Positions 49,980 through 63,978 of a DNA stretch of 64,000 bases are shown here, one piece after another. Each line of letters begins with the position of its first letter. Positions within the stretch are counted from its first letter, which is position 1. The position numbers and the translations under genes were made by a program. Under the pieces are notes generated by a model that had not been told where the DNA came from, did not search any database, and was given only the letters and a program-made list of their open reading frames with translations. Location of the stretch: positions 1-64,000 of the IMG/VR virus record IMGVR_UViG_3300048924_000191. One strand, 5' to 3'.

Positions 49980-50005
49980 ATTCTGCCCGATCTAGGAGAC
50001 GCAAC

Positions 50006-50803
50006 ATGTTTCTACTACCTGGCGGAGCGGAGAAAGCTCTGACTGATGCCATTCACGCAGCCAACCCGCTCGCCGGTGACGTGCATGTCGATGACCTGTA
50101 CTTCGGCCTGATCACCAAATCGGCTGACCAGTCGGGTGCTGTAGAAGTACCTGTAGTGGCGATGTACAACAGCGACTTCGAAGGCTACATCCGCTTCAAA
50201 TACGACCGTCTCGATCTGGGGCGTGCGTACCAGGGGATCAAACCTCAAGTCAAGCGTGTGGGTTATCCTACACTCTATCGACTGTTACCCATCATCAACG
50301 AAACGCTGGGTCTGTCACTGACTGAGCGTGACGTGGTCGACGTGGCCATTACCTGGTTGGGTGAGAACGAGCAGGTGAACATCCCTATCGTCTCCAAACC
50401 TGACTCGCTGGGTTACGAGGGACAGTTCCTTGTTGAATACACTCGGGTACGTCCGGAGTTGGCTTCGATTGCCAACCGAATCCTCGATGTGTTGAAACAT
50501 CCGTTGGACCCGAAGTTGGGACAACGTTCGATGTCGATGAACACTTGGGGGATCGACTTCACTGACGATCAAGCGTCCCTGTTGACTAACGCAGGTGCTT
50601 GGCGTTATCCCGATCAAGTACGCAAGGTGATGGAAGGTCATGGGTTCTTCAACTGGCCTCAAGCACCTTGGTACTCCCTGATCGTTTCGGCTACGTCGGA
50701 TATCCCCACTGCCAACAAGGAATACACGCACGTTATCATTCAACCGAACGTGTCGTACCCGAATCACATTGGCGACGCTTACTTCCACTATAACCGGTCA
50801 TAA
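50006..50803 (+). CDS. virion array protein, domain A plus HYN domain
   Basis: FKYDRLDL; SLGYEG; ends YFHYN. Confidence 0.7.
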   Translation: MFLLPGGAEKALTDAIHAANPLAGDVHVDDLYFGLITKSADQSGAVEVPVVAMYNSDFEGYIRFKYDRLDLGRAYQGIKPQVKRVGYPTLYRLLPIINETLGLSLTERDVVDVAITWLGENEQVNIPIVSKPDSLGYEGQFLVEYTRVRPELASIANRILDVLKHPLDPKLGQRSMSMNTWGIDFTDDQASLLTNAGAWRYPDQVRKVMEGHGFFNWPQAPWYSLIVSATSDIPTANKEYTHVIIQPNVSYPNHIGDAYFHYNRS

Positions 50804-50815
50804 AGAGGGCTCGAT

Positions 50816-51649
50816 ATGAGCTTGTACCCTGATCCGCTAGAAGCCGTGGTAGAGTCCATCGAGACTCTCAACCCTGGCGTACAGCTGGCCGTAAACGAAT
50901 ACAACTTCGATCCTTCGATGGCGATTCCGGAAGAGGCTTCGGGTGTCAACACCCAGATCCATATCTCGGCCAAAGGTGCATCCACTCCATACGCCGGCGC
51001 TGTGGACATCAAACACATCCGCCTCAAGCTGTCTGACCTGACTACGCTGATCCCGTCAGAGATTGCCGTGAGTGGTATCACTACTACTCTTGATCTGGCG
51101 TTGGCGATCAACAAGTTCTACGGCACCAACTTCACCACTGCGGATATCGTGACCAGCGATGCTGAGTTGGTAGATGGCGCTGGCGATGTCACCCTGGTAG
51201 CTAAGGCCACTTCGCGTGGCTGGATCGGCCAGGTAACGTTCCATGTGACGAAGGGACGGATTCCTCTCACCGACGTCATTACTGTGACGCGTTTGCCCGG
51301 ACTCAACTACCCAGACCCGTACGAAGCCAAGCCTTTCGGTATTGCGTATACCTACTGGCGCGATTACTCCCTACAGCACGCTATCCTGGACGTTCTCCAG
51401 ACAGGTGCACAAGGAGACCTCGAAGCGGTCAAAGACGCCATGGTCAACACCACAGGCGATGCCTGGGTCACTACCGGCTCTAGCCGTTACTCTCTCGAGG
51501 GTGCGGAGATCCTTTACGTCGGCGATACCGCGGGCTATCCAGAGTTCAATCAGAACTACGAGAAAGGCGTCGTGGTTAAATTGAGTGCAGCCTGTCTGGG
51601 TTATTCCGGTCGTCTTTTCCTGCACTACAATCTGCCAGAAGTCCTCTAA
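50816..51649 (+). CDS. virion array protein, domain A plus HYN domain
   Basis: SRGWIG; LTDVITVTRLPGL; LFLHYN. Confidence 0.7.
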   Translation: MSLYPDPLEAVVESIETLNPGVQLAVNEYNFDPSMAIPEEASGVNTQIHISAKGASTPYAGAVDIKHIRLKLSDLTTLIPSEIAVSGITTTLDLALAINKFYGTNFTTADIVTSDAELVDGAGDVTLVAKATSRGWIGQVTFHVTKGRIPLTDVITVTRLPGLNYPDPYEAKPFGIAYTYWRDYSLQHAILDVLQTGAQGDLEAVKDAMVNTTGDAWVTTGSSRYSLEGAEILYVGDTAGYPEFNQNYEKGVVVKLSAACLGYSGRLFLHYNLPEVL

Positions 51650-51657
51650 GGAGATAG

Positions 51658-52440
51658 GTGATGGATAGCGGTGACAAGATCCGCGAGCTTATCAACCTCG
51701 CCAATGACCCTCCGAAGTTATTCACAACGCGTAACCTTCGTCTCGATGTTCCAGTCCCCGATGCGGGTGATGGTTGGAACACCAAGATGGAAGTGGAAGG
51801 TATCCCAGGCCGTGGTTATTACGGCACTGAGGAGATCTACTACAAGCGCATCCCGCTCGAACTGGTAGAACGTTCCACTCCGCTGCGTTCGATCGCTCCA
51901 CTGACGCCACAGCTCGTCCTGGACCTGTTCAACGGTGCTACCGGCCTGTACATCACACTGGAAGATGTCGAACCCTTCACGCCTCCTCAATTGGAGGACG
52001 GTGATTCGGGACAAGTCGACATCGTAGCAGTTCCATTGTCGATGGGCTTTACTGGTACTGCGACGATCCTGCTGGAGTACGGTAAGGCTTGGTTGGATAC
52101 GGTCGTTTCCGTTCGCGTGCTGCCGGTGCTGAAACATCCGATCGTCGTATTGAATCGGATGTCTACAAGGATGTTGACGTGGGGTATGGACTTCACTTCA
52201 CTGCGCGACGCCATCCGGCCTGACAGTAAAGGTGATTACTCCAACTGGGACGCTCTCCAAGCCGCTTGCGTGGAGCTGAACATCCCGACCTGGATGAAGA
52301 ACAAGATCACCGACCAACCGACGTCAGCGGTGCCTGACAGCAACCAACTGTTTGACCGTGTAGTGATTCAGGCAAGCGTATCCAGTGAAGGAATGGATGG
52401 CAAGGTCTACCTGCACTACAACAACCTGGAAGAGGTTTAA
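51658..52440 (+). CDS. virion array protein, domain A plus HYN domain
   Basis: YYGTEEIYYKR; SMGFTG; VYLHYN. Confidence 0.7.
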   Translation: MMDSGDKIRELINLANDPPKLFTTRNLRLDVPVPDAGDGWNTKMEVEGIPGRGYYGTEEIYYKRIPLELVERSTPLRSIAPLTPQLVLDLFNGATGLYITLEDVEPFTPPQLEDGDSGQVDIVAVPLSMGFTGTATILLEYGKAWLDTVVSVRVLPVLKHPIVVLNRMSTRMLTWGMDFTSLRDAIRPDSKGDYSNWDALQAACVELNIPTWMKNKITDQPTSAVPDSNQLFDRVVIQASVSSEGMDGKVYLHYNNLEEV

Positions 52441-52442
52441 CC

Positions 52443-53390
52443 ATGCCACTATTCACCAAGCCGTCTCAAGCCTTGGTTTATGACCTCATCAATGAGGCGA
52501 ACCCGGACCTTCCGATCGTGCTCTCGCCAGCTAACTTTAAGTTGGGTGCCCCAGCCGCTGGTACGGTGCCTGGCCGTCCTGAGCTGAACACGGTAGTAAC
52601 CGGCTCGGCTATCGGTACCGACTACATTGGTCGTAAACCGCTCAACTACCAACGCCTCTCGCTCAACAGCCTGTTCCGTGGGATGGTGGTGCAGATCAAC
52701 AAGTATTCGGCTAACCAGAACTCTGGCTCGTCGGGTGCTATCGTATTCACCCTGTATCAGCTCCTGCCGATCATCAACACGCTGTACGGCATGAACCTCA
52801 CTGAAGACGACGTGACCAACGTCAACATCACGCGGGGTACGGCGCAAGAGAACGGTTTCTACACCTCGACCGTGACCGTGAATGCCAAGGCGACCTCGCT
52901 GGGCTACATCGGTTCGTTCGCACTGAAATGGCGCGGCGCTCCACAAGACCTCGAGTCGATGATCACCGTGACCGATCTCGCTGCTCGTCTGTTCCCAGGC
53001 GGTAACACCTTCGATGGCACTCACCCAGTCGTTGTCAACAACATGGCGTACAACATCGATTGGACGTCGTTCATCGCTACTGCACCGTGGGGTAACTTCC
53101 CAGGTAACCCAGTGGCTGGTAACGATACCCCAGCGTTCGGTAACCGGTTCATCGCAGAACTCAACCGTCTGTACGGTAAGGGTCTGGTGGGTTCGGTCAA
53201 CAACGCGCCTGCATACGCTTACATGGATTGGGGCGGTGTCGTATACGACCTCAGCACTCAAGCCGGTCGAGACGCCTGCCCTCTGGCTAACTCCAAGTAC
53301 TACAACCGTGTGCTGGTCTGGACTATCCCAGATTACGACACCGCGCGTGGTTCGGGTATCGGCCAACACTTCATCCACTTCAACGTCTGA
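52443..53390 (+). CDS. virion array protein, domain A plus HFN domain
   Basis: LVYDLINEAN; YQRLSL; SLGYIG; ANSKYYNRV; FIHFN. Confidence 0.7.
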   Translation: MPLFTKPSQALVYDLINEANPDLPIVLSPANFKLGAPAAGTVPGRPELNTVVTGSAIGTDYIGRKPLNYQRLSLNSLFRGMVVQINKYSANQNSGSSGAIVFTLYQLLPIINTLYGMNLTEDDVTNVNITRGTAQENGFYTSTVTVNAKATSLGYIGSFALKWRGAPQDLESMITVTDLAARLFPGGNTFDGTHPVVVNNMAYNIDWTSFIATAPWGNFPGNPVAGNDTPAFGNRFIAELNRLYGKGLVGSVNNAPAYAYMDWGGVVYDLSTQAGRDACPLANSKYYNRVLVWTIPDYDTARGSGIGQHFIHFNV

Positions 53391-53401
53391 GGATAGACTC
53401 C

Positions 53402-54274
53402 ATGGCGTACATGACTCAGTCACTCCCCGACGTCCTGGCGGCTATCAACGCCGCCAACTCGACGACGTACAAGGTCACCGAAATCGACTTCGGCGCACCT
53501 CAAGCGTTGTCGGGTACGTGGAAGGGGCAAGCAACATCCCGCAACACCGGTATCCGCATCACCGCCAAGGCCGGCAGTCCGTATCAGGGCAAACGCGATC
53601 TGACCTACGATCGACTGAACTTGGGTTCGCTGAATGCAACTAACCTCCCGGGGTTCAAGTGCTCGGCGTACAATGTCACCACCGTCTACACATTGCTGCC
53701 GATGTTGCAGTACTGGACCGGTATCCAGTTCACCACCGACGATCTGGAAGACGCGCCGCTGGTAGACAATGGTGACGATACCCATTCCGTCACTCTGACG
53801 GCCAAGACCACCAGCCTGGGCTGGATCGGTACCGCGCCACTGACCATCACCAAGGGCGCTGCCCCGCTGGATGCGTTGATCACAGTGACCTCGCTGAACG
53901 GTTTGAACTACCCAACCGCCAGTGATCAGGACACTTACGGTGCGATGTACCTGTACCCGTACGATTACACCAACTACTTCAGCACGCTGTCCCCAATCGC
54001 ACCAGGTACCCTCACCAGCACGCAAGCAGATGCCCTCGTGGCCATGCTCCTGGCTACCGACATCGGCGCCGGCAAGGCGCTGTGGGCGAACAACCCTGGT
54101 GCGACGGCGTGGAACCTGGCGAACGCAACGGTGGTCAGCAACGGTCTCAACAACCCGACCCTGCCAACCAACCCATCGTACAAATACGTGATGGGTCTGC
54201 GCCTCGATCCGGCTGTGTTGACTCCTGCGGGTCTGATGTACCTCCACTACAACGATCCATTCGACGCGTCGTAA
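53402..54274 (+). CDS. virion array protein, domain A plus HYN domain
   Basis: YDRLNL; SLGWIG; LDALITVTSLNGL; MYLHYN. Confidence 0.7.
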   Translation: MAYMTQSLPDVLAAINAANSTTYKVTEIDFGAPQALSGTWKGQATSRNTGIRITAKAGSPYQGKRDLTYDRLNLGSLNATNLPGFKCSAYNVTTVYTLLPMLQYWTGIQFTTDDLEDAPLVDNGDDTHSVTLTAKTTSLGWIGTAPLTITKGAAPLDALITVTSLNGLNYPTASDQDTYGAMYLYPYDYTNYFSTLSPIAPGTLTSTQADALVAMLLATDIGAGKALWANNPGATAWNLANATVVSNGLNNPTLPTNPSYKYVMGLRLDPAVLTPAGLMYLHYNDPFDAS

Positions 54275-54281
54275 GGGGTCA

Positions 54282-54309
54282 TAGACGAGCGCCGGTGGGC
54301 GCTCGTCTA
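54282..54309 (+). terminator. 12-bp hairpin at the boundary of two array sub-blocks
   Basis: TAGACGAGCGCC-ggtg-GGCGCTCGTCTA. Confidence 0.55.
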
Positions 54310-54331
54310 CTAACCAATTGGGAGATTATCC

Positions 54332-55357
54332 ATGCTTCGCGCCATCTTCGGTTTCGACCACATCGCAAAGAACGTGAGCGACACGTGGCTGCCAAACTGC
54401 GGTTATGTTTTTAGCAAGACCGCCTCAGGCACCAACCGTGGGGTCATCATTACACCTGACGGATCGTTGGCTGCGACACCCTCTACCGGCAACACGCCGT
54501 ACGTTCAGGTGTTCCACGATCTGTCCAAACACCTGGTTGCGCCTGTTAGCACATTCACCATCGGTATCCGCGCTAAACAGTTGGCGTTAGGCAATAGTGG
54601 TGGTTTCCTATACCTAGCCGCTGAGGCAGTCCCTACCTCGTTCATGTTGCTGTTGAACTTTCAGCAATTGACGAATATCGGCGTTGTGGGTGGCGAGAAC
54701 TATATTGAGATCACATTCGATCTGATAGCAGCTACCGCCACCTACTACATCGACGACGTGTTCTTTACCAGCATCTCCATCAACACGATCTCGTTGGCTA
54801 ACCTAAGAGCCGGCATCGTCCAGGTGGTCTACACGCTGAGCTACCCGGCCAACGTGGCGGGTATCACGGCAGTGCGTGACATCTACCTGACCGACAACTA
54901 TCCAGGTGATGGTTACGTGGGTCGTCTGGGTCCTCGCAAGATATTCCCTGTTACGCTTGACAGCGCCTCAGGAACTGATTGGACCACCAGCGATGGGTCT
55001 GGGCTTCTGACTGCTCTAAACGTCCCTATCGAGACGGCTGGAGCTGCTACCATGACCTCCGGCGTCAGCAAGGCACCACTGGTGGTGGGATTGAACCCAG
55101 GGTCTCTACCAGCGAACGCCAACGTCGATGGCGTATTCGTCATGATGGCCGGTAAGGTAGATCAGGCCGGCGCACTGACAGGTCTCTCGGCAACCAACGG
55201 CGGGAAGACCATTCTCGCTCAGTCGAAGGCGATCGGCACGGCGTTCAAGTACGGCAACCCATTCGGTGTGTTCACCCGCGCCCCTAATGGCAGTCGCTGG
55301 ACTGCTGCTTCCATCGACGCGACCACGCTCTCATTGACTCCAGACGTAGCGAGTTAA
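54332..55357 (+). CDS. virion array protein, family B (lectin/LamG-like beta-sandwich head)
   Basis: MLRAIFGFDH; YIEITFD; RDIY..D..G.LGP; APNG..WT..IDAT. Confidence 0.65.
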   Translation: MLRAIFGFDHIAKNVSDTWLPNCGYVFSKTASGTNRGVIITPDGSLAATPSTGNTPYVQVFHDLSKHLVAPVSTFTIGIRAKQLALGNSGGFLYLAAEAVPTSFMLLLNFQQLTNIGVVGGENYIEITFDLIAATATYYIDDVFFTSISINTISLANLRAGIVQVVYTLSYPANVAGITAVRDIYLTDNYPGDGYVGRLGPRKIFPVTLDSASGTDWTTSDGSGLLTALNVPIETAGAATMTSGVSKAPLVVGLNPGSLPANANVDGVFVMMAGKVDQAGALTGLSATNGGKTILAQSKAIGTAFKYGNPFGVFTRAPNGSRWTAASIDATTLSLTPDVAS

Positions 55358-55360
55358 GCC

Positions 55361-56377
55361 ATGTCATTAACCGTACGGGCAGTGCAAGCTTACGCGCTCG
55401 GTAAACCACTGGCAGCTTCCACGGTTCGGTCGATCACCGCTTATGCGCTGGTTGATACGAACCCGGTGGTTCCTGGTCCACCGGCGCCTACTGATTACAA
55501 GGCCGATCAGATCGACATCTTGTACGATCTGATCGAGAAGAGTAACCCGGGTTTCAAAGCGCAATATCCGAAAGGTACCGTGCAGTTCAGTGCGGTGACG
55601 GCGGTTCCCACGGTACCTGGGGATGGGTACAAGACCGATACGTCGATCTTGGTGTCTCCGGCACCTGGTAGTTCGGCACTGGGTCGTCAGACGGTTCGTT
55701 ATCGCCGTATCGATTTCGGTACCATCTTCAAGCACATGACGCTGACCCTGAACGATTACGTCGCTTCAGGTACGTTGTCAGCGGCGACGTGGAAAGCTTC
55801 GTTTGCCTCGAAGTTTGGGATCAAGATTCCTGCTGCAGACATTGCCAACACGACAGCGCTGACTAGCGGTGTGTTGACCAACATCAACGTGATCGCCACC
55901 AGCTGGTGCTATAAAGGTACTGTGCAGTTGACGTGGACGGTAGGACCTCGTCCTTTCACCTCCATCGTCACGGATGCAAACCGTGCGCTGGTTGGGCGGT
56001 TTTACCCAGGCAATAACAACGACTTCACCACCCCCGGCCGTAAACCGCAGGGTGAGATGTTGGTCTACTGTCAGGACGCCAGTGTTATCTCGTCGTTCCT
56101 GGAAGCGTTCACTAGCGCTTCTGTTCTCGCCTCGTCCCACAGCACAGTTATCAACTTGGTTAACTGGCTGCTGGCTAACACGAAGCGCACGGATTGGAAC
56201 GTCGGTGATTCCTCCTCTGGATCAGGTGGTGTAACCGGACTGACCTGGTATCGGTACACGCTGCCCAATGCCGCTATCCCAGATGCCAACTCCGCCAAGT
56301 ACAACCGTTGTGTCGTCTTGCAAAGCGTGGCCGGTAGTTGGTTCGCTGGCAAGATCATCATCCACTACAACGTGTAG
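55361..56377 (+). CDS. virion array adaptor: two N-terminal strand repeats, domain A, HYN domain
   Basis: TVRAVQAYAL/TVRSITAYAL at 17-aa spacing, Pro linker, YRRIDF, IIHYN. Confidence 0.7.
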   Translation: MSLTVRAVQAYALGKPLAASTVRSITAYALVDTNPVVPGPPAPTDYKADQIDILYDLIEKSNPGFKAQYPKGTVQFSAVTAVPTVPGDGYKTDTSILVSPAPGSSALGRQTVRYRRIDFGTIFKHMTLTLNDYVASGTLSAATWKASFASKFGIKIPAADIANTTALTSGVLTNINVIATSWCYKGTVQLTWTVGPRPFTSIVTDANRALVGRFYPGNNNDFTTPGRKPQGEMLVYCQDASVISSFLEAFTSASVLASSHSTVINLVNWLLANTKRTDWNVGDSSSGSGGVTGLTWYRYTLPNAAIPDANSAKYNRCVVLQSVAGSWFAGKIIIHYNV

Positions 56378-56385
56378 GGTCCGTC

Positions 56386-56880
56386 ATGGGTATTTTCGTA
56401 TCAAGCCAGGCGGACTTGATTGCGATGATCAACGTTGCGAGCGGTGTCAACTTCACCGCTTCCGACTTGGTCTTCGGCAAACCAAGAGCCGCTACCTCCG
56501 CTGAGATCACTCAGTTCGGAAAGAACAGCGCTGTCGCTGTGCGGGCCTCCGATACCACGACGTTGGTGGCCGGATTCACGACCTTCTTCTACGACCGACT
56601 GGATCTGAAGACGCTAGAGCTCTTTGACTTGACCACATGCTTCTGTGCAGACGGACTGGCCAAAGACGCGTGGTTGGGTACCGTCATCGGTTACCTCAAC
56701 GTCCCGTTCACGCCGACACATCTGGTCGAACACAGCTCGACTACGGTGAACGGTAAAGTGAATGTCCAACTGGAAGCCACGACCGATAGCCTGGGTTGGT
56801 TCGGCACAGGGACGTTGGTGTTCGGTGGTTATCCAGATATCTCGACAGCCTTCACTGACAACAAATTGACAGGCTTCTAA
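56386..56880 (+). CDS. virion array protein, domain A only
   Basis: LIAMIN..LVFGKP; FYDRLDL; SLGWFG; ISTAFTDNKLTGF. Confidence 0.7.
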   Translation: MGIFVSSQADLIAMINVASGVNFTASDLVFGKPRAATSAEITQFGKNSAVAVRASDTTTLVAGFTTFFYDRLDLKTLELFDLTTCFCADGLAKDAWLGTVIGYLNVPFTPTHLVEHSSTTVNGKVNVQLEATTDSLGWFGTGTLVFGGYPDISTAFTDNKLTGF

Positions 56881-56895
56881 GCCGAGGAATCGATC

Positions 56896-57273
56896 ATGAA
56901 TGATTGGCCGAACTACCTGATCCGTCAGGACTTCACCGAACCAGGTGAGGTGCTGAGTGTGATCCCGCTGGGCCTACTCAACGAGGCGGATCAGCGACTG
57001 ATGGCCCAAGTGCTGTCTGAGTACGCACCGCAAGTCGATAAAGACAAGTGGAACATGGACGAGCACGGCACGGAATATAGCCTGAATGGCGCTGAGGTCA
57101 TCTACAACGGTCTCAACCATCGCGACCTGCCAACCTTCAGCACGTACAAGTACGCCCTCGGGTTGCGCTTCCCAGAACGTTCTACGGCACCCGTAGGTAC
57201 TATCTTCCTGTGCTGGCATGAGCCGGTGGAGGAAGAGCCAGTTGCTGAAACACCACCTGTGAGTGAGGAGTGA
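56896..57273 (+). CDS. stand-alone HYN-type domain
   Basis: aligns with the C-terminal half of 53402 (NGLN..LPT..YKY..GLR); GAGGA RBS. Confidence 0.65.
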   Translation: MNDWPNYLIRQDFTEPGEVLSVIPLGLLNEADQRLMAQVLSEYAPQVDKDKWNMDEHGTEYSLNGAEVIYNGLNHRDLPTFSTYKYALGLRFPERSTAPVGTIFLCWHEPVEEEPVAETPPVSEE

Positions 57274-57277
57274 TCTC

Positions 57278-58312
57278 ATGCTTCGTGCAATGTACGGTTT
57301 TGATCACTGTGTCAGAACTCCAGCACCTGCCGTTGGTGCTGTGAACAACCCTTCGGTAGGTTTCGGTTACGCCAATGCCACACTGCTGAACCCTACCCTC
57401 ATGGCGGTGGACAGTAACGGTTTTCTTGGCGGTTACTCCTCAGCTCAGAACGTCAACCTGGCGTTCGACATGACGGGTCTGATTCCACCTAACCCGACCA
57501 AGGTCACGTTCGGTTGGCGTGTAAAGACCCTCCAAGTCTACGGCGCTGCTCACGCGATGATCTCGTTCTCGGTCCCAGGTACGCCTAACGATACGACTGC
57601 GTACATCATCCAGATGGCAGCAGCCAACGCCCCGTGGCTGCCAACGGTAGGTAACGAGGTCTACGTCGAGCTGACTTACGACTTCGTGACGTTCACGCCT
57701 ACCCTCACAGTCAACGGCGTCCCTGTGACTGCTACGATCGGTAGCGCTCCTAACACCGCTCAGAAGGCTGCGTTCGTGTCGGGTGCCTGGACGATCAACT
57801 TCACGCTCGCCAACACCGTGAACGCCCGTTATGCCTACCGCGACATCTACATCGTCGATGCGGTGGCGGGTGACGGCATGGTGGGTCCGCTCGGTCCTCA
57901 GAAGCTGTTTCCAATCACCTTGGACGCCGCAGCAGGGGCTGGCTGGACACCTTCGTCTGGTACGCTGTTGGATGTGTTGAACGCTGCCTTGCCAGCTAAC
58001 CCAACTGCCACTTCGCCAAGCGACAAGACTCCATTGGTCACCAGCCTTAAGACCAGTGCTCCTGAAGGTAGTCGTGTCACTGCGGTGAGTCTGTCGTTGT
58101 CGGGGACCAGTAGTGGTGACGGGGCATCGACCAGTAAGGTTGAGATCACCCAAAACAGTCAGAGCTTCTCACCGAAGTTTCCCGTCGTGGCGAAGACTAC
58201 CACCTACGGTGCGCCAATCGGGATCTTCCCGAAAGCGCCTGATGGCACCTCGTGGGATCTGGCAAAAATCGATGCGACCACCCTCAAGCTGACCCCTGAC
58301 ACCGCCGCCTGA
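57278..58312 (+). CDS. virion array protein, family B
   Basis: MLRAMYGFDH from ATG 57278 behind GAGGAG; YVELTYD; RDIYIVD; GPLGP; APDG..W..IDAT. Confidence 0.65.
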   Translation: MLRAMYGFDHCVRTPAPAVGAVNNPSVGFGYANATLLNPTLMAVDSNGFLGGYSSAQNVNLAFDMTGLIPPNPTKVTFGWRVKTLQVYGAAHAMISFSVPGTPNDTTAYIIQMAAANAPWLPTVGNEVYVELTYDFVTFTPTLTVNGVPVTATIGSAPNTAQKAAFVSGAWTINFTLANTVNARYAYRDIYIVDAVAGDGMVGPLGPQKLFPITLDAAAGAGWTPSSGTLLDVLNAALPANPTATSPSDKTPLVTSLKTSAPEGSRVTAVSLSLSGTSSGDGASTSKVEITQNSQSFSPKFPVVAKTTTYGAPIGIFPKAPDGTSWDLAKIDATTLKLTPDTAA

Positions 58313-58329
58313 TTCGAGGATTTATCATC

Positions 58330-59298
58330 ATGGCAGTTAGAGCAATTATCGGGTTCGACCACCTGCCGCAGAACGACACGAGCTGGATTAACTACGCCAG
58401 CCACGACATGACGCGCGCCGCAGACTTGTCGGCCCAAAACACCATCGTCAACGGATGGCTGGTCAGTAACGCTACTGCATCGGGCGCTGAGCGCGTAACC
58501 ATTCCTCTCGACAAATACCTGGTCGCTCCGGTAGCCAAGATCTGGTTCGGTATCCGCTGCCGTTCTACTCTCAACGCGCGTGGCGGTGCAGGCATCATCT
58601 ACCTGAACGGCACCTACGTGTTGTTGGATACGTTGATCGGCGTCACGGGTACTACCACGTACCTTGAGTTCTCCTACGACGTTGCCAGTGGTGCTGTAGA
58701 ACGTTGGATCAATGGCGTCAAACAGGCTAACGGTACCAGTCCTGGTGCAGGTCTGCGTAACCTCACGTTCGGCTTGGAAGCCAAGGGTAGTCTCAACGGT
58801 CGATACGACTGGCGTGATATCTACGTCGTCGATGATCAGGGAGCTGCACAAGGTTTGCCGGTAGGTCCTCTTGGCGCTCAGGTGACTTACCCCATCACTT
58901 TGGATGCGGCTTCGGCTTCGGACTGGACCACCACTCCGAGTGGTGCCACCCTGCTCGAAGCGTTGAACGAGCCTGGTGCGGTCCCTACGGCTAAAATCGC
59001 AACGTCGGCTTCCAACGCTCCTCTGACGGTGAGTCTCAAGTCCTCAATGCCTGCGGGTGTCGTGGTCAATGCCATCGAACTCATGGGCGGTGGTCGTTCG
59101 ACCACGACCAGTACGGCGAAAGTCGCGGCGAAGATCTCGACGGGCGGTACGGATGTTGCAGGTCTGACGCCCGTTGCGCCGATCACCAACTATGCGTACA
59201 GTCTTGGGTTCGGTGTGTTCCACAAGGCTCCGAATGGCACCCCGTGGACCAATACCAACATCGACGCTACGGATCTTGTCCTGACGCCTGATGTTTAA
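58330..59298 (+). CDS. virion array protein, family B
   Basis: MAVRAIIGFDH; YLEFSYD; RDIYVVD; GPLG; APNG..WT..IDAT. Confidence 0.65.
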   Translation: MAVRAIIGFDHLPQNDTSWINYASHDMTRAADLSAQNTIVNGWLVSNATASGAERVTIPLDKYLVAPVAKIWFGIRCRSTLNARGGAGIIYLNGTYVLLDTLIGVTGTTTYLEFSYDVASGAVERWINGVKQANGTSPGAGLRNLTFGLEAKGSLNGRYDWRDIYVVDDQGAAQGLPVGPLGAQVTYPITLDAASASDWTTTPSGATLLEALNEPGAVPTAKIATSASNAPLTVSLKSSMPAGVVVNAIELMGGGRSTTTSTAKVAAKISTGGTDVAGLTPVAPITNYAYSLGFGVFHKAPNGTPWTNTNIDATDLVLTPDV

Positions 59299-59309
59299 GG
59301 GGATTCTCC

Positions 59310-59981
59310 ATGCCAGTCAATATTGCAAACATCCAAGGCTACGCATTGACGCGCCTAGCCTCGCCGGTGAACATCGCCAACATTCAGGGTTACGTGCTGG
59401 CTAACCCACCTGCGCCCGTCCAACTGCGAGACATCCGTGGTTACGTGATGGTGACTGCGCCAGCGCCCGTTCAGTTGCGGACCATCAATGGCTACGCCAT
59501 GGTCCCGTTCCAGGACTTGCCGAAAGGTAAGACGGCAGCAGTGGCATTGATGGACATGATCCTCGTTCGGTTGAAGAGTGCCCGTCCAGCCTCGCACTTC
59601 AATTTGGGTGCTGTGGAGCTCGGTACCGAGACCGACTACAACGCCAAGGTGAAGTTGACACCGAATGCGGTAGCCTTATTGTCAGGGGAGATGTACTTCC
59701 ACTACAACCGGATTTATCTGTCACGGATGCCGAGTCTGAGTTCGATCGTGATCGGGAGCGCGGCTAACACCCACGCCCTGATTCCAGCGATCAACACTCT
59801 CACCGGCATGCAACTCACCACGAACGACATCGTGAATGAGGACATTCCAGCAGGGTACGTGGAAGTCACTCTGACTGCAGCGGCTACCAGTTATCTGTTC
59901 ATTCCAGGGACTCAGTGCCAAGTGGGTAACACACCGTCGCTGGCAGCTCAGTTCAAAACTGACACGATCCTCTGGTCGTAA
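59310..59981 (+). CDS. virion array adaptor: four N-terminal strand repeats plus domain A
   Basis: four 17-aa repeats PV[NQ][IL]..I.GY; FHYNRIYL; THALIPAIN. Confidence 0.7.
   Translation: MPVNIANIQGYALTRLASPVNIANIQGYVLANPPAPVQLRDIRGYVMVTAPAPVQLRTINGYAMVPFQDLPKGKTAAVALMDMILVRLKSARPASHFNLGAVELGTETDYNAKVKLTPNAVALLSGEMYFHYNRIYLSRMPSLSSIVIGSAANTHALIPAINTLTGMQLTTNDIVNEDIPAGYVEVTLTAAATSYLFIPGTQCQVGNTPSLAAQFKTDTILWS
59313..59510 (+). repeat. 4 x 51-nt coding tandem repeat in two sub-types
   Basis: PVNIANIQGY x2, then PVQLR[DT]I[RN]GY x2. Confidence 0.85.
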
Positions 59982-59994
59982 GGAAAAACAAACC

Positions 59995-61086
59995 ATGAAG
60001 ATTCATGCGATGTACGGTTTGGACCTGCCGACCACGAACGCGACAGGCAACGGCAGTAACGTACTTATCACTCGGCTGCCAAACGGGCCGTGGCAGTCGA
60101 TGTCGACAAACAGCGAAACCAATTTCAGTATCCAGGTTTGGACGGATGGATGGCTGAGAATGGGGATCGGTGCCGGAGCTCCGAACTTTGGCAACTATCG
60201 ATTCCGCGCCGTAGCTGACATCAAGGAAATGATCCCAGTCGTTACACCAACCTCGAACTTGTACTTTGGCGTTCGGGTAAAGGCCGGTACCGGATACACC
60301 GGCAGTACTGTGGTGACGTTGTCTTCCGCGGTAGACATCAATAACCTGGTCAACCTGTTCCAGATCACGGATCTGCCCGGTTACGTGATCGATAAGTCGT
60401 ACTACGTAGAGTTTAACTTGAACTTTGCGAACAACACTATCGATCGCCGTGTCGATGGTAAACCACTGGCGCAGATGGCCATGCCTGCTTGGATGGCCAC
60501 CGCAGTATCTGCGTCGCCTGGCGGTACCAGCGTTTATGTGGGTATCGGTGCCAGCTTCTCGTACAGTATCAGTCAGGGCCAAACCCACTACTTCTGGTGG
60601 CGTGATTTCTACTGCGTCGAGTGGGAGGCTGGGGAACTCGCTCAGTTTCTGGGTCCTCAGGTGGTGGAAAAGGTACCTGTCGATACAGTGGCGGCTACTG
60701 CCTGGACTGCTAGTACTGGCACTGCGACTTCGGTCTTGAAGACGGGGTACAGTAACCCATCCACTGCCATCGGCGCTCCAACCCTCACCACCGACGATGC
60801 GATGACGCCGGGTAGTATCACCTACAACCCCACCAACATTCCAGTGAATGCCGTTCTCAACGGTATCCTCGTGAAGGGACGCTCAGCAGTGAGTGTAAAT
60901 GCCACGGGCAACTTGGGCGTCTCCGCTACGGTCGGTGGGGTGGAGTCTTCGGATGCCAACGTAGCGATGGTAGCTGCGCAGACGTTCTACGACCGGATGT
61001 TGTTCCTCACTAAAACCCCAGGCGGGCTACCATGGACTCAGCCAGCGTTGGCGGGCCTTACCGTCAAAGCCAAACCGAAGGTGTAA
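59995..61086 (+). CDS. virion array protein, family B (divergent)
   Basis: MKIHAMYGLD; YYVEFNL; WRDFY; FLGPQ; TPGG.PWT. Confidence 0.62.
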   Translation: MKIHAMYGLDLPTTNATGNGSNVLITRLPNGPWQSMSTNSETNFSIQVWTDGWLRMGIGAGAPNFGNYRFRAVADIKEMIPVVTPTSNLYFGVRVKAGTGYTGSTVVTLSSAVDINNLVNLFQITDLPGYVIDKSYYVEFNLNFANNTIDRRVDGKPLAQMAMPAWMATAVSASPGGTSVYVGIGASFSYSISQGQTHYFWWRDFYCVEWEAGELAQFLGPQVVEKVPVDTVAATAWTASTGTATSVLKTGYSNPSTAIGAPTLTTDDAMTPGSITYNPTNIPVNAVLNGILVKGRSAVSVNATGNLGVSATVGGVESSDANVAMVAAQTFYDRMLFLTKTPGGLPWTQPALAGLTVKAKPKV

Positions 61087-61089
61087 TCC

Positions 61090-62292
61090 ATGGCTAACCC
61101 TAAATTCGTACTTCGATCGCTTGACGTGTTTGCGATGTACGGCGTGAATAATCTTCCGCCGTTTGGTACCCCTGGTCCTGCTGCGATTCTTACAGCGATC
61201 AACAAGGAGCAGGGCATCACACTCACCTCAGCACAGGTCACGGTTGGTGCGCCTGTAGCAACGACAGGCGACACGTTGTTCAATACCTCGGTGACACTGA
61301 CATCAATCCCTAACAAGGGGTTTAAAGGGACGTTCACGGCTCGATACAACCGAGTCAGTGGCAGTCTGTCAGCGGTGTTGAACAACCTCACCATTCCCGG
61401 TGATGGAGCTTTCACGGTAGGTACCACTCACGACCTTATCCCTCTGATCAACACAGCCACGGGCTTGACGTTGGTTACTGGAGACATCGTGAATGAGGCC
61501 ATTCCGGTTGGGACAAACTCGGTCGATCTGAAAGCTGCTTCCACGAGTTACTTCTTCCTGCCTGGGTCGACCTTCAAGGTTTACGCAGGTGAGATCGCAG
61601 GTGAGCCGTGGATGTTGTTCGACGTGAACTCGTTGACTGACGTCAAGACCACAGGTTCGACGGGTACGCTGGCAAGTGCAGCGCAGGACAACACGTACTT
61701 GATTGATGGGGAACCTACCCTGAAGATCACCGGTACGGGTTCCCTGACGATCAACCTCGGTCAGTTGTTTGATTCGAGTATTCCTGAATGGACGCTGGAA
61801 TGGTCGAGTCGTTTGAACACGACCACCACAGGCTACGCTAACCTGCTCCGTCTTGGCAGTGCGACGGCGTACCAGCTGGTGCAACGGACTTCCGATTCTG
61901 GTTTCGGTCTGAGGATACAGCAAGGTATCGACTTCTCGACACAAGCCGGTGCATGGAACTTCCCGTTCGGCAGCGTTGCGAAGAACGGCGTGCTGACTCG
62001 TTACGCCGCTCAGAAGAAGAATGGTCTCATCACCATGTTTGTGGACGGTAAAGCTACCAACATGGCCAATGGTACCGGTTCGACCTACAACAGTAAATCG
62101 TTTTCCGCAGGCGCCGGTGTTGCAGCGTGTGACCGGATTACCCTGGGACTTCTGGCGCAAAACATCAGTCATGTTCGTCTCAGTAAGTTCGCTCGGTATC
62201 CGATCGACTACACGCCGAAACCGTTCAAGTCTGCTCCAACGCTTGCGCAAGCTGCACCGAACACCGATCTCTCTGGATTCGATCCAGCATAA
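61090..62292 (+). CDS. virion array adaptor with inserted LamG/ConA-like domain
   Basis: one N-terminal strand (VLRSLDVFAM), domain A, then WTLEW..ITMFVDG..ISHVRLSKFARY LamG-like block, terminal LAQAAPNTDLSGF. Confidence 0.7.
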   Translation: MANPKFVLRSLDVFAMYGVNNLPPFGTPGPAAILTAINKEQGITLTSAQVTVGAPVATTGDTLFNTSVTLTSIPNKGFKGTFTARYNRVSGSLSAVLNNLTIPGDGAFTVGTTHDLIPLINTATGLTLVTGDIVNEAIPVGTNSVDLKAASTSYFFLPGSTFKVYAGEIAGEPWMLFDVNSLTDVKTTGSTGTLASAAQDNTYLIDGEPTLKITGTGSLTINLGQLFDSSIPEWTLEWSSRLNTTTTGYANLLRLGSATAYQLVQRTSDSGFGLRIQQGIDFSTQAGAWNFPFGSVAKNGVLTRYAAQKKNGLITMFVDGKATNMANGTGSTYNSKSFSAGAGVAACDRITLGLLAQNISHVRLSKFARYPIDYTPKPFKSAPTLAQAAPNTDLSGFDPA

Positions 62293-62297
62293 AGCAG

Positions 62298-62330
62298 CAT
62301 ACAGCCGGGGCGCAATGCCCCGGCTGTATG
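62298..62330. terminator. 14-bp hairpin between convergent genes
   Basis: CATACAGCCGGGGC-gcaat-GCCCCGGCTGTATG. Confidence 0.78.
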
Positions 62331-62345
62331 TCGTTGCCGTAAGGA

Positions 62346-62870
62346 TTAAGCCTCGGCGTCGAAACCACTCAGGTCAGTGGTAGTCGCCGCTTCATCCAAA
62401 GGGACGTCAGCGTCCGGGATGTCCAGGACGGCGGCGTAGGTGCCGGTGTACAGCAAGCTGGACACGTTGGCGACCACGTCGGCCGAACCCGGGGTATCTT
62501 CGTTCACTGGGCGAACGATGTTCGACAGAGTGAATTCGGATTCCAGCAGACCCAGAGCGGTAGCGATCTTGGTCTTGACCTGTGGGTCGGTGTCGGAAGC
62601 TGCGATCACCACCGGAATATCTTTGGCGGCAGCGATTGCCTGGCCGGAAGCCAGAGCCAGACGGGTGTAGGAGAAAGTCTGCGAACCAGAGAAACCCTGG
62701 TTGGCGATTGCGGTGAAGGTCACCGAGGTGTTACGACCGCCAGTACCGGCAGCGGCCGAAGGCGCACCGACGGTAACTTTGGCCAGAGTGGCGTTCAGAC
62801 CGGCGTTCGCACTGTTGACCAGTGCCAGGACGTTCTCCTGAGCCGTGATGGACGGGTTGATCTTTGCCAT
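62346..62870 (-). CDS. virion array protein, domain A (inverted, own promoter)
   Basis: 174 aa from ATG 62870 (MAKINP); FSGSQTFSYTR; SLLYTG; LDEAATTTDLSGF. Confidence 0.72.
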   Translation of the reverse strand: MAKINPSITAQENVLALVNSANAGLNATLAKVTVGAPSAAAGTGGRNTSVTFTAIANQGFSGSQTFSYTRLALASGQAIAAAKDIPVVIAASDTDPQVKTKIATALGLLESEFTLSNIVRPVNEDTPGSADVVANVSSLLYTGTYAAVLDIPDADVPLDEAATTTDLSGFDAEA

Positions 62871-62930
62871 GGTATCGATCTCTCGAAAAGTAGCGAGGGA
62901 TTTCGCTACATAGGATTCACGGCATAGAGC

Positions 62931-62958
62931 CCACCTGAGGGCGCAAACCCTCAGGTGG
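62931..62958 (-). terminator. 11-bp hairpin after the Tad1-fusion gene
   Basis: CCACCTGAGGG-n6-CCCTCAGGTGG followed on - by GCTCTATGCCGT. Confidence 0.65.
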
Positions 62959-62964
62959 TGAAGA

Positions 62965-63978
62965 TTACTCTTCTTGCTTAACGCCCAGCAGACCAGCCTG
63001 CTGGCGACGCAGAGCGCGAGACTTGAGCGCTTCCATGGCCTGATACATACCGGCCAGAGCAACGTCATTCTCTTCGCAGTGCATCTCGCCTTGGTTGAAG
63101 TGCTCCAGGCGATGGATCTGTACAGCCAGCAGACTTTCGAAGGTCACGCCGGTGTGGCCGATCTGGTCAACTGGACCGGACTGGAATTGAATCAGGTTGC
63201 CGGTCTGAGGACGGATACCGCCAACGCCTTCAGTGGCGAAACCGTTGATCAGGTAGAAGTCGTACGAGTCAGGGAAGTCGGTAGGAACCATCCGACGGAC
63301 CTGGATGCTGGTATCGATACCCTCGACCTTGTGGGTCGTGATCGGCGCATCTTCCGAGAACTTCGGTGCAGGCTTACCTTCAGCCGGGAAGTCGAACAGA
63401 GTCGACAGCTCATGCTGGAAGCCGTTGGTGTGGTCAGCGATATAAACCGGCACACCGCCCTTACCTGCGTGTTCGACCATCCAGACGTTATCGATCAGGA
63501 TTTCGAACTTGTCGCCGTAGGTGTCGGTGGCGAACTTCACCAGACCGGCCTTGAGCGTTTCCAGCAGCGCAGGACGATCGAAGTCGGCCTTCAGGTCAGC
63601 TTCGGTAACCAGACGAGTCACTTCGGTTTGAAACGCAGCGAAGAATTCTTTCTCTTGCGCTTTCTCACGCTCTACGAACTCAGGGTCCAGGCGTGGATCG
63701 GCCGGTGCCGGGATGTGGTCGTAGCGCTCGGTGTCTTCGATCTCCGCTTGACTGCGGAACCAGATCGGACTATCAACGCTTACGGCAGTGCCAGCAGCAG
63801 CGTAACCGTAGGCCAGTTCACCGGTAGCTTCCAGTCTGACGAATTCATCCGGGGTGATCTGGATGAAGTACTCGACGCCAGTCTTGCGATGACGAACCTT
63901 GTCGCCGCGCGAGTACTTGCTGAGCTTCACAGGAGCTTGTGGTTCCTGGGTTTGTTCTTGCGGTTGGGCTTGTTCCAT
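62965..63978 (-). CDS. tad1: multidomain anti-defence protein with C-terminal Tad1-like sponge domain
   Basis: IQFQSGPVDQIGHTGVTFESLLAVQIHRLEHFNQGEMHCEENDVAL...AMEALKSRALRRQQAGLLG matches the Tad1 pattern FQxGP..G.NGV..E.L....RL..F....C.EN..A....A...L..R...R...G..G; N-terminal DUF1653/SH3-like domain. Confidence 0.8.
   Translation of the reverse strand: MEQAQPQEQTQEPQAPVKLSKYSRGDKVRHRKTGVEYFIQITPDEFVRLEATGELAYGYAAAGTAVSVDSPIWFRSQAEIEDTERYDHIPAPADPRLDPEFVEREKAQEKEFFAAFQTEVTRLVTEADLKADFDRPALLETLKAGLVKFATDTYGDKFEILIDNVWMVEHAGKGGVPVYIADHTNGFQHELSTLFDFPAEGKPAPKFSEDAPITTHKVEGIDTSIQVRRMVPTDFPDSYDFYLINGFATEGVGGIRPQTGNLIQFQSGPVDQIGHTGVTFESLLAVQIHRLEHFNQGEMHCEENDVALAGMYQAMEALKSRALRRQQAGLLGVKQEE

What the first reader, a model, noticed from the sequence alone, without database searches (positions are those of the whole stretch)
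62965..63978. Tad1-like immune-signal sponge fused to two additional domains in a nucleus-forming jumbo phage
Seen: the last ~110 aa (about 62965-63320) carry the Tad1 signature, including FQxGP, RL..F, C-x-EN and terminal R...R...G..G. They are preceded by a DUF1653/SH3-like domain (GDKVRHRKTGVEY..RLEATGELAYGY..IWFRSQAEIED) and a ~100-aa unknown middle domain. Established: characterised Tad1 proteins are small single-domain oligomers that sequester Thoeris gcADPR and CBASS cyclic oligonucleotides; the phage nucleus shields DNA but not against diffusible signals. Inference: fused partners of anti-defence domains are good candidates for new inhibitors. Deviations from the usual pattern (GHTG for GVNG, CEEN for CREN, LLG for VEG) may shift ligand specificity.
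Basis: partly seen in the sequence, partly recalled or inferred. Interest (0 to 1): 0.82.

Follow-up and report, generated by a model that had tools for sequence, protein, structure and literature searches.

The report
Tad1 immune-signal sponge with extra domains
A rhizosphere giant phage related to ΦKZ encodes a 337-residue protein whose last third is a genuine Tad1-type sponge for bacterial immune signals, joined to two extra domains. Tad1 with an added N-terminal part is already known from phage ΦKZ, so this is a new variant, not a new kind of system.

Summary
Residues ~206-337 are a Tad1 domain. A profile matches ΦKZ gp184 (4e-45), CmTad1 (1.8e-17) and CbTad1 (3e-12). The 20 best Foldseek matches of the AlphaFold model are all Tad1. 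The gcADPR/cyclic-dinucleotide pocket is kept (F294, N304, R321, R325). The cyclic-trinucleotide site is not (E302, A309), as in most relatives sampled. Residues ~20-90 are a DUF1653-like small barrel from a family of about 190 cluster representatives. Residues ~95-205 occur only in this six-member family, with a weak gp25-like fold resemblance.

The extension here is not homologous to that one.

The phage is ΦKZ-like (gp123 RNA polymerase subunit, ΦKZ-type capsid protein). No nucleus-shell gene was found in the window. The gene lies beside virion genes, and conserved TATG motifs, the ΦKZ late-promoter signature, precede its transcription unit.

My best reading is a virion-delivered sponge (about 0.45). 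A second inhibitor domain is not excluded.

The parts
62965..63978 (-). Whole ORF, 337 aa plus stop codon: a three-domain Tad1 fusion protein (P0001)
   Evidence: ORF list. Identical protein found on 10 contigs. Four full-length homologues at 46-51% identity and one at 37%.
63916..63978 (-). Residues 1-21: Q/E/P-rich leader with lower model confidence; M1 E2 Q3 A4 Q7 are invariant in the five close homologues
   Evidence: Alignment A1. Mean pLDDT 63-79 for the first 20 residues.
63709..63915 (-). Residues ~22-90: DUF1653-like small beta-barrel domain
   Evidence: N-terminal profile search: 196 cluster representatives, almost all matching profile positions 19-90, mostly 70-90-aa stand-alone proteins. 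Atlas structure search: 8 of 10 rows are DUF1653 clusters, TM 0.56-0.65. Pfam gives only a marginal hit, in 1 of 32 members.
63364..63696 (-). Residues ~95-205: family-specific alpha/beta domain (helices 99-127 and 135-154, then four strands). Conserved E159, W166, G172-K173-G174-G175, H183 and S192
   Evidence: Found only in P0001-P0007. Model of the domain alone has pLDDT 90.9. No significant PDB match; the best is the gp25-like 2ia7 at E 0.03. The Atlas lists gp25/GP46 baseplate clusters at TM 0.57-0.61. Conserved residues from A1 and A9.
62968..63363 (-). Residues ~206-337: Tad1 (Acb2/Tad1 hairpin, PF24729) sponge domain, four strands plus two helices
63004..63099 (-). Pocket residues. F294 (63097-63099), N304 (63067-63069), R321 (63016-63018) and R325 (63004-63006) correspond to CbTad1 F82/N92/R109/R113. 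E302 (63073-63075) and A309 stand in place of the cyclic-trinucleotide residues R90/T97
   Evidence: Residue-by-residue HMMER alignment to CbTad1 and CmTad1. Residue roles from preprint 10.1101/2023.11.15.567273. Family-wide frequencies.
62931..62958 (-). Perfect 11-bp GC-rich hairpin (CCACCTGAGGG-TTTGCG-CCCTCAGGTGG) 7 nt after the stop codon; no T-run follows
   Evidence: Sequence. A hairpin occupies the same place in relatives L011 and L012.
62906..62926 (-). Two TATG motifs (62923-62926 and 62909-62912, the second within ATCCTATGTAG) between the hairpin and the next gene: a candidate ΦKZ-type late promoter
   Evidence: Conserved TATG..TATGtagtgaa in four diverged relatives. The same 11-mer heads the transcription unit that holds the Tad1 gene (L001 9087-9097). 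TATG is the ΦKZ late promoter consensus (PMC4666361).
62346..62870 (-). Downstream gene on the same strand: 174-aa DUF7941 protein, matching 'virion structural protein' families. It is the first of a large paralogue array
   Evidence: Pfam PF25613, E 5.7e-18. PHROG 1037, E 6.7e-19. Synteny conserved in four relatives.

Best explanation
The protein is a Tad1-family sponge. Its C-terminal domain should sequester TIR-derived gcADPR (Thoeris signal), and possibly cyclic dinucleotides, in the conserved pocket at the Tad1 dimer interface. It should not bind cyclic trinucleotides, because the arginine and threonine that hold them, and most hexamer-contact residues, are replaced.

The two N-terminal domains are a DUF1653-like barrel and a family-specific alpha/beta domain with a weak gp25-like resemblance. 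They are most likely not inhibitors. I propose they incorporate the sponge into the virion, so that it enters the next host cell with the DNA, before any phage gene is expressed. This would be the same solution as ΦKZ gp184/Tad1, reached with a non-homologous extension.

Shown here: the Tad1 homology, fold and pocket residues; the ΦKZ-like lineage; the conserved position next to virion genes; the conserved TATG motifs. Inferred: ligand binding, late expression, packaging and delivery.

Confidence is about 0.85 for the sponge part. The value given below is for the whole statement including virion delivery.
For: Tad1 homology and fold.

Pocket residues: N304, R321 and R325 are conserved in all six family members (R325 in 5 of 6) and in 124-126 of 126 relatives. 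Their roles come from mutagenesis and structures.

Precedent for virion-borne Tad1 in ΦKZ-like phages:
- gp184 sits in the capsid vertex complex and is cleaved by the head protease.
- gp184 is called Tad1 and reported as injected.
- 201phi2-1 gp280 was found in virions by mass spectrometry.
- A Tad1-like protein of phage Eowyn is annotated as structural.

Lineage: gp123 nvRNAP homologue, E 7.5e-50; ΦKZ-type capsid protein.

Context: the order 197-aa P-loop protein, then Tad1 fusion, then DUF7941 virion protein is conserved in four diverged relatives, at the edge of a virion-gene array.

Promoter signature: the unit is headed by a terminator followed by conserved TATG motifs. In the window, TATG precedes 5 of 5 structural genes that have their own upstream region and 0 of 4 DNA-metabolism genes (my Fisher test on these counts gives p about 0.008). 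TATG is the ΦKZ late promoter.

Middle domain: two independent searches surface gp25-like baseplate folds.
Against: - The N-terminal 205 aa show no similarity to the ΦKZ-type extension (hhalign probability below 1%).
- They lack its conserved W-x-x-S-L-E-S motif.
- I found no conserved S/A/G-x-E site between the domains by inspecting alignment A1. That this is the head-protease motif is my own recollection.
- Relatives of the DUF1653-like domain are mostly free-standing small proteins or parts of enzymes, not known virion-targeting modules.
- TATG is only four bases, so the promoter argument is suggestive at best.
- The gp25-like matches are below significance (E 0.03).
- There are no proteomic, expression or binding data; no RNA run shown to hold the gene was found.
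- I could not read the primary ΦKZ Tad1 paper, so the injection claim comes from secondary citations.
Confidence: 0.45

Rival explanations
1. Two-in-one inhibitor. The middle domain, alone or with the DUF1653-like domain, is a second ligand-binding or enzymatic anti-defence module, so one polypeptide neutralises two signals or systems.
For: The middle domain folds confidently (pLDDT 90.9). It has a strictly conserved polar cluster: E159, W166, a glycine-rich G-K-G-G loop, H183 and S192. That pattern would suit phosphate or nucleotide binding. The domain has no relatives of known function. Other Tad1 fusions to functional domains exist, such as the cyclophilin fusion in FLC9 gp131.
Against: There is no similarity to any sponge, phosphodiesterase or nucleotide-binding fold. 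The nearest fold matches are virion baseplate proteins. The domain never occurs on its own or with other partners, unlike typical anti-defence modules. The conserved residues could equally serve protein-protein contacts.
Confidence: 0.2
2. A cytoplasmic sponge that is not packaged. The N-terminal domains serve as an oligomerisation, stabilising or localising scaffold (for instance tethering the sponge to a phage or host structure), and the protein acts in the same infection cycle in which it is made.
For: Classical Tad1 proteins act from expression in the infected cell. The hexamer-contact residues of CmTad1 are not conserved here (my mapping), so another oligomerising element could be needed. 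There is no recognisable protease site or gp184-like extension.
Against: A late-type promoter signature and the virion-gene neighbourhood. All Tad1 homologues of ΦKZ-like phages with any experimental data are virion proteins.
Confidence: 0.25
3. A purely structural virion protein in which the Tad1 fold has been co-opted as a building block and no longer binds signals.
For: gp184 fills a gap between capsid proteins in the ΦKZ capsid. The middle domain weakly resembles baseplate gp25. The gene lies among virion genes.
Against: The ligand-contacting N, R and R residues are kept in essentially every family member, which implies selection for binding. ΦKZ orf184 is dispensable for growth. The modelled part of gp184 in 8y6v is not among the 50 listed fold matches of the model, which is consistent with the Tad1 domain not being the resolved capsid-bound part.
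Confidence: 0.08

Closest known systems
ΦKZ gp184 (Tad1 of Pseudomonas phage ΦKZ; PDB 8y6v chain I) and its ~190-230-aa relatives (201phi2-1 gp280, PhiPA3, PA1C)
   Same: A Tad1 domain at the C-terminus of a longer protein in a ΦKZ-like jumbo phage. C-E-E-N in place of C-R-E-N. The same conserved pocket residues. The gene lies in or near virion modules.
   Different: The N-terminal extension is unrelated, twice as long, and made of two well-folded domains instead of an acidic low-complexity stretch. The conserved W..SLES motif is absent. Identity in the Tad1 domain is only about 29%. Virion presence is unproven here.
Stand-alone Tad1 sponges (CbTad1 7uav/7uaw, CmTad1 8kbb, SBSphiJ7 Tad1)
   Same: Same fold (TM 0.64-0.72) and the same gcADPR/cyclic-dinucleotide pocket residues F, N, R, R.
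   Different: Those proteins are 120-140 aa and single-domain. They are hexamers with a cyclic-trinucleotide site (R90/T97 in CbTad1), which is replaced here by E302/A309. The hexamer-contact residues are not conserved here.
Burkholderia phage FLC9 gp131 (annotated as a hypothetical protein)
   Same: 338 aa, from a jumbo phage, with a C-terminal Tad1 domain. It is the best database match to this Tad1 domain (36% over 140 aa).
   Different: Its N-terminal partner is a cyclophilin-type peptidyl-prolyl isomerase (PF00160, E 2.5e-44), unrelated to the partners here.
DUF1653 (PF07866) small domains
   Same: Predicted fold and size of residues ~20-90. Like DUF1653, the domain occurs free-standing and fused to diverse enzymes.
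   Different: The sequence does not reach the Pfam model. It belongs to a separate family with its own consensus (H-x-K-x-G..Y, TP-x-D, RLEAT-x-EPAY-x-Y, W-x-R-x-Q-x-EMEDGRF).

Membership tests
Tad1 (Thoeris anti-defence 1; Acb2/Tad1 hairpin PF24729) | Significant sequence similarity to characterised Tad1 proteins | tested here: met
   phmmer: CmTad1 1.4e-6. Profile: CmTad1 1.8e-17, CbTad1 2.9e-12, gp184 4.2e-45. PHROG 2428, E 2.5e-18. PF24729 is recorded for close homologues. The Pfam model itself does not reach threshold on this protein.
Tad1 (Thoeris anti-defence 1; Acb2/Tad1 hairpin PF24729) | Fold: N-terminal antiparallel sheet followed by two long C-terminal helices | tested here: met
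   The model has strands 207-213, 226-232, 241-245 and 260-265, then helices 280-294 and 302-327. The top 20 Foldseek PDB matches are all Tad1. The structure is predicted, not solved.
Tad1 (Thoeris anti-defence 1; Acb2/Tad1 hairpin PF24729) | gcADPR / cyclic-dinucleotide pocket residues (CbTad1 F82, N92, R109, R113) | tested here: met
   They correspond to F294, N304, R321 and R325 in the HMMER alignment. N and both R are near-universal in 126 relatives.
Tad1 (Thoeris anti-defence 1; Acb2/Tad1 hairpin PF24729) | Cyclic-trinucleotide site and hexamer contacts (CbTad1 R90/T97; CmTad1 R88, T95, K96, Q98, E99, M102, W103, K106) | tested here: not met
   E302 and A309 stand at the two binding positions, and none of the eight CmTad1 contact residues is kept (mapping). 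This is a feature of the crystallised clade, not of the whole family: R is found in only 8 of 126 relatives.
Tad1 (Thoeris anti-defence 1; Acb2/Tad1 hairpin PF24729) | Binds and sequesters immune signals; rescues phage from Thoeris or CBASS | not testable with these tools
   Needs ITC or native-gel binding assays and plaque assays.
ΦKZ gp184-type virion-packaged Tad1 | N-terminal extension homologous to gp184, with the conserved W-x-x-S-L-E-S motif | tested here: not met
   No similarity by BLASTP or hhalign. The motif is seen in 16 ΦKZ-type proteins but not in this family.
ΦKZ gp184-type virion-packaged Tad1 | Encoded by a ΦKZ-like phage | tested here: met
   PHIKZ123 nvRNAP homologue, E 7.5e-50. 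Capsid protein in PHROG 3231, with best matches in ΦKZ-like phages. Chimallin was not found in the window.
ΦKZ gp184-type virion-packaged Tad1 | Late expression, presence in virions, cleavage by the head protease, injection | tested here: inconclusive
   Only indirect evidence: conserved TATG motifs head the unit and the neighbours are virion genes. No proteomic or RNA data.
DUF1653 (PF07866), for residues ~20-90 | Match to the Pfam model | tested here: not met
   No hit for the protein or the excised domain. Only 1 of 32 family members hits, at E 0.0075.
DUF1653 (PF07866), for residues ~20-90 | Same small-barrel fold | tested here: met
   Atlas structure search: 8 of 10 rows are DUF1653 clusters, TM 0.56-0.65 over 60-68 residues. 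A DUF1653 protein of phage Ea35-70 appears in BFVD at E 0.16. These compare predicted models with predicted models.

The most novel reading that the evidence does not exclude
The family-specific middle domain (residues ~95-205, with an invariant G-K-G-G loop, His, Ser and Glu) is a previously unknown signal-binding or signal-modifying module. The protein would then be a tandem counter-defence factor that covers a second immune pathway besides Thoeris.
Probability: 0.15. Interest if true: 0.75.

Novelty: new variant of a known kind. Interest (0 to 1): 0.45.

Why it matters
ΦKZ-like phages shield their DNA, but diffusible immune signals still reach host effectors. A sponge that is already present at injection would close that gap.

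If this protein is packaged, then two unrelated N-terminal extensions (ΦKZ gp184 and this one) would have been recruited independently to deliver the same sponge. That would point to a general rule: jumbo phages pre-load counter-defence proteins.

It also gives a compact test case for what targets a protein to the virion in this lineage.

If instead the middle domain binds a ligand, it would be a new sponge fold.

Either way, the pocket mapping predicts a Tad1 clade that binds gcADPR and cyclic dinucleotides but not cyclic trinucleotides. This prediction is directly testable.

Tried and rejected
- Pfam and NCBIfam on the whole protein and on each part: nothing usable.
- Near-identity DNA search against 50,697 phage records: no match. 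The phage is known only from root, rhizosphere and soil metagenomes.
- Looking for the nucleus shell. tblastn with ΦKZ ChmA, PhuZ and several RNA polymerase subunits found nothing in the window. I suspected the 654-aa ORF at 34636-36600, but it gave no PDB or Atlas lead and only matches the DT01 hypothetical gp026.
- The idea that the middle domain is a second, permuted Tad1/Acb2 hairpin: hhalign probability 0.16% and no Tad1 among its fold matches. Rejected.
- The idea that the N-terminal barrel is related to the small beta-rich insert of gp184: hhalign probability 0.14%. Rejected.
- Paralogues of the N-terminal or middle domain elsewhere in the window or in four related loci, which would have suggested a shared packaging tag: none.
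- Synteny with the ΦKZ gp181-187, 201phi2-1 gp278-282 or FLC9 neighbours: none detectable.
- A conserved S/A/G-x-E protease site in the linkers: none found by eye in alignment A1.
- Sigma-70 promoter scan around the gene: no sites.
- RNA evidence: no run shown to be RNA holds the gene, and laying contigs only confirmed presence in independent metagenomes.
- The first mixed alignments for structure prediction misplaced fragments and were discarded.
- The primary paper on ΦKZ Tad1 (PMC12159963) is not held, and its preprint lacks the ΦKZ part.
Full report
**The object.** The window holds an ORF at 62965-63978 on the minus strand that encodes 337 aa. An AAGGAA ribosome-binding sequence lies upstream. 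The same protein (P0001) is found on ten metagenomic contigs. Two of them are about 243 kb long, and they come from root and rhizosphere samples. Only five full-length relatives exist in 5.8 billion clustered proteins and 1.8 billion representatives: four at 46-51% identity and one at 37%.

**C-terminal domain.** Residues ~206-337 belong to the Tad1 family.
- PHROG 2428 matches at 2.5e-18.
- phmmer against PDB sequences gives CmTad1 (8kbb) at 1.4e-6 and ΦKZ gp184 (8y6v chain I) at 1e-6.
- A nine-sequence profile of the domain gives gp184 4.2e-45, CmTad1 1.8e-17 and CbTad1 2.9e-12.
- The Pfam family recorded for its relatives, PF24729, is 'Acb2/Tad1 hairpin domain'.
- An AlphaFold2 model of the whole protein is confident (mean pLDDT 89.3).
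- Its 20 best Foldseek matches in the PDB are all Tad1 chains, with TM 0.64-0.72 normalised by the target. In the viral structure library the best matches are again Tad1-like proteins.

**Ligand sites.** The published work on CbTad1 and CmTad1 names F82, N92, R109 and R113 (CbTad1) as the pocket for gcADPR and 2',3'-cGAMP. It names R90/T97 (CmTad1 R88/T95) as the cyclic-trinucleotide site, which also builds the hexamer (preprint 10.1101/2023.11.15.567273). In the HMMER alignments the pocket residues correspond to F294, N304, R321 and R325. The trinucleotide residues correspond to E302 and A309. None of the eight CmTad1 hexamer-contact residues is kept.

- The N is present in 126 of 126, the first R in 126 and the second R in 124.
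- The position of R90 is E or D in 74 and R in only 8.

The prediction from sequence is a sponge for gcADPR, perhaps also for cyclic dinucleotides, without the trinucleotide site. This is inference; nothing was measured.

**N-terminal 205 residues.** A profile of residues 1-208 was scored against 1.84 billion representatives and found 196 proteins. Beyond the family itself, all listed hits match only positions ~19-90. Most are free-standing proteins of 70-90 aa. Some carry the domain fused to other parts, for example a dihydrofolate reductase.
- Pfam does not recognise this domain in the window protein. Only one of 32 family members touches DUF1653, at E 0.0075.
- By predicted structure, 8 of 10 nearest Atlas clusters are DUF1653 (TM 0.56-0.65).

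Residues ~95-205 have no relatives outside the six-member family.
- Modelled alone, they fold confidently into two long helices and a four-stranded sheet (pLDDT 90.9).
- No PDB structure matches significantly. The best match is 2ia7, a gp25-like protein, at E 0.03. The Atlas independently lists gp25 and GP46 baseplate clusters at TM 0.57-0.61. This is a lead, not a finding.
- The domain carries a conserved polar set: E159, W166, G172-K173-G174-G175, H183 and S192.
- It is not a second Tad1 hairpin (hhalign probability 0.16%).

**What is already known.** The closest solved relative, ΦKZ gp184, is a minor capsid protein of the inner vertex-binding complex. It is cleaved by the head protease gp175, and large parts of it are unresolved (PMC11297242). 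A ΦKZ transposon study and a 2026 review call gp184 'Tad1', citing Li et al. 2024 (Nature 635:719). They describe it as a non-essential protein whose N-terminus is wedged in the capsid and whose C-terminus is freed by the protease and injected. I could not read the primary paper.

- 201phi2-1 gp280, a gp184 homologue, was detected in virions by mass spectrometry according to its GenBank note.
- About half of the Tad1 relatives sampled are 185-260 aa.
- Burkholderia jumbo phage FLC9 gp131 is a cyclophilin-Tad1 fusion of 338 aa.

The premise that characterised Tad1 proteins are single-domain therefore no longer holds. A Tad1 with an N-terminal extension in a ΦKZ-like phage is a known theme.

The extension here is, however, unrelated to the ΦKZ type. 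It also lacks that type's conserved W-x-x-S-L-E-S motif. That motif fits the S/A/G-x-E head-protease consensus as I recall it; this is my own knowledge and was not checked here.

**The phage.**
- The window encodes a 776-aa capsid protein of PHROG 3231. Its best matches are DT01 (34.5%), LucasX, Goslar and RP12.
- It encodes a homologue of PHIKZ123, a subunit of the ΦKZ non-virion RNA polymerase (7ogp chain E, E 7.5e-50). This gene is syntenic with DT01 gp025-gp026.
- DT01 has both ΦKZ-type polymerases (PMC8541153).

The phage is thus ΦKZ-like. No homologue of ΦKZ chimallin or PhuZ was found in these 64 kb. 'Nucleus-forming' is plausible but unproven, because three quarters of the genome lie outside the window.

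**Context and expression.** In four diverged relatives the gene order is conserved. A 197-aa protein with a Walker A motif (GPVGRGKS) comes first. After 3-30 nt comes the Tad1 fusion, then a hairpin, then a 174-aa DUF7941 protein of 'virion structural protein' PHROGs. A convergent array of DUF7941 paralogues follows.

The unit that contains the Tad1 gene begins after a terminator-like hairpin with a T-run. Conserved TATG motifs follow it. The same ATCCTATGTAG 11-mer recurs between the Tad1 gene and the DUF7941 gene. TATG, with the start at G, is the ΦKZ late-promoter consensus recognised by the non-virion polymerase (PMC4666361).

In the window, TATG lies upstream of all five structural genes that have their own upstream region: the capsid protein, a virion protein at 7192, a baseplate protein at 12096, a tail protein at 14634 and DUF7941 at 62870. 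It lies upstream of none of four DNA-metabolism genes: UvsX-like, ribonuclease, SbcC-like and DnaB-like. A one-sided Fisher test that I computed from those counts gives p about 0.008. A four-base motif is weak evidence, but it is conserved in position across relatives and fits the lineage.

**Interpretation.** I am confident that the C-terminal domain is a Tad1-type sponge (about 0.85). For the N-terminal two domains I favour a virion-incorporation role, analogous to gp184 but with a different module. The whole statement gets about 0.45.
- In favour: the precedents, the lineage, the neighbourhood, the late-type promoter signature and the weak baseplate-like fold resemblance.
- Against: the lack of homology to gp184's extension, no recognisable cleavage site, and no proteomic or RNA data.

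**Verdict.** This is a new domain architecture of a known counter-defence family, in a lineage where extended, virion-borne Tad1 is already described. Interest is moderate. The testable points are the predicted ligand spectrum, whether the protein is packaged, and what the orphan middle domain does.

Noticed in passing
L006 3410-4426 (Burkholderia phage FLC9, LC667451.1 135653-136669, gp131): This gene is annotated as a hypothetical protein. It is a fusion of a cyclophilin-type peptidyl-prolyl isomerase (PF00160, E 2.5e-44) with a C-terminal Tad1 domain. It is a second, different Tad1 fusion in a jumbo phage.
   Followed up: partly
L001 9040-9376 (same contig as the window, about 1 kb beyond its end); also L011 5005-5342, L012 5044-5383, L013 1300-1666: The ~320-nt non-coding region upstream of the P-loop gene is 70% identical across four phages whose neighbouring proteins are only 37-51% identical. 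It contains a terminator, a TATG, about 220 nt of conserved blocks, a GC hairpin and a second TATG. RNAalifold finds 58 pairs, 13 with compensatory changes. There is no Rfam match. It could be a small RNA or a structured leader.
   Followed up: partly
window, upstream of 41947(-), 7192(+), 12096(+), 14634(+), 62870(-): TATG, the ΦKZ late-promoter motif, lies 38-93 nt upstream of all five structural genes that have their own upstream region. It is absent upstream of the UvsX-like, ribonuclease, SbcC-like and DnaB-like genes.
   Followed up: partly
window 36626-38314 (-) and 34636-36600 (-): The 562-aa protein that PHROGs call 'polymerase' is a homologue of PHIKZ123, a subunit of the non-virion RNA polymerase (E 7.5e-50). 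The adjacent 654-aa ORF matches only DT01 gp026 (25% identity) and has no other relatives or fold lead.
   Followed up: partly
window ~50000-62870, and L001 11109-21014: There is a large array of DUF7941 (PF25613) paralogues that match 'virion structural protein' PHROGs. Its content differs between relatives: L011 has a kelch-type beta-propeller gene in it, and one run's contig replaces 1439 nt (60811-62251) with 781 other letters. It looks like a variable receptor-binding cassette.
   Followed up: no
window 62295-62335: A ~40-nt stretch in the convergent intergenic region after the gene that ends at 62292 is matched by several otherwise unrelated contigs in four metagenomes, with loose ends on both sides. 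It may be a short repeated element or a shared terminator.
   Followed up: no
L001 9377-9970 (gene immediately upstream of the Tad1 fusion, outside the window): This 197-aa protein has a Walker A motif (GPVGRGKS) and matches PHROG 3787. It lies 3-30 nt upstream of the Tad1 fusion in all four relatives, so the two may be translationally or functionally coupled.
   Followed up: partly
alignment A10 (N-termini of 16 ΦKZ-type Tad1 proteins, e.g. P0155 residues 1-20): ΦKZ-type extended Tad1 proteins share an N-terminal W-(A/L)-x-(S/G)-L-E-(S/D) motif followed by an acidic stretch. The S-L-E fits the head-protease consensus as I recall it, which suggests a conserved processing site near residue 14.
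   Followed up: no
P0041 (249 aa, from the deep search): The DUF1653-like domain family of residues 20-90 also occurs at the C-terminus of a protein whose N-terminal sequence looks like a dihydrofolate reductase (judged by eye, not scanned), and at the end of other multi-domain proteins. It is a mobile small domain of unknown role.
   Followed up: no
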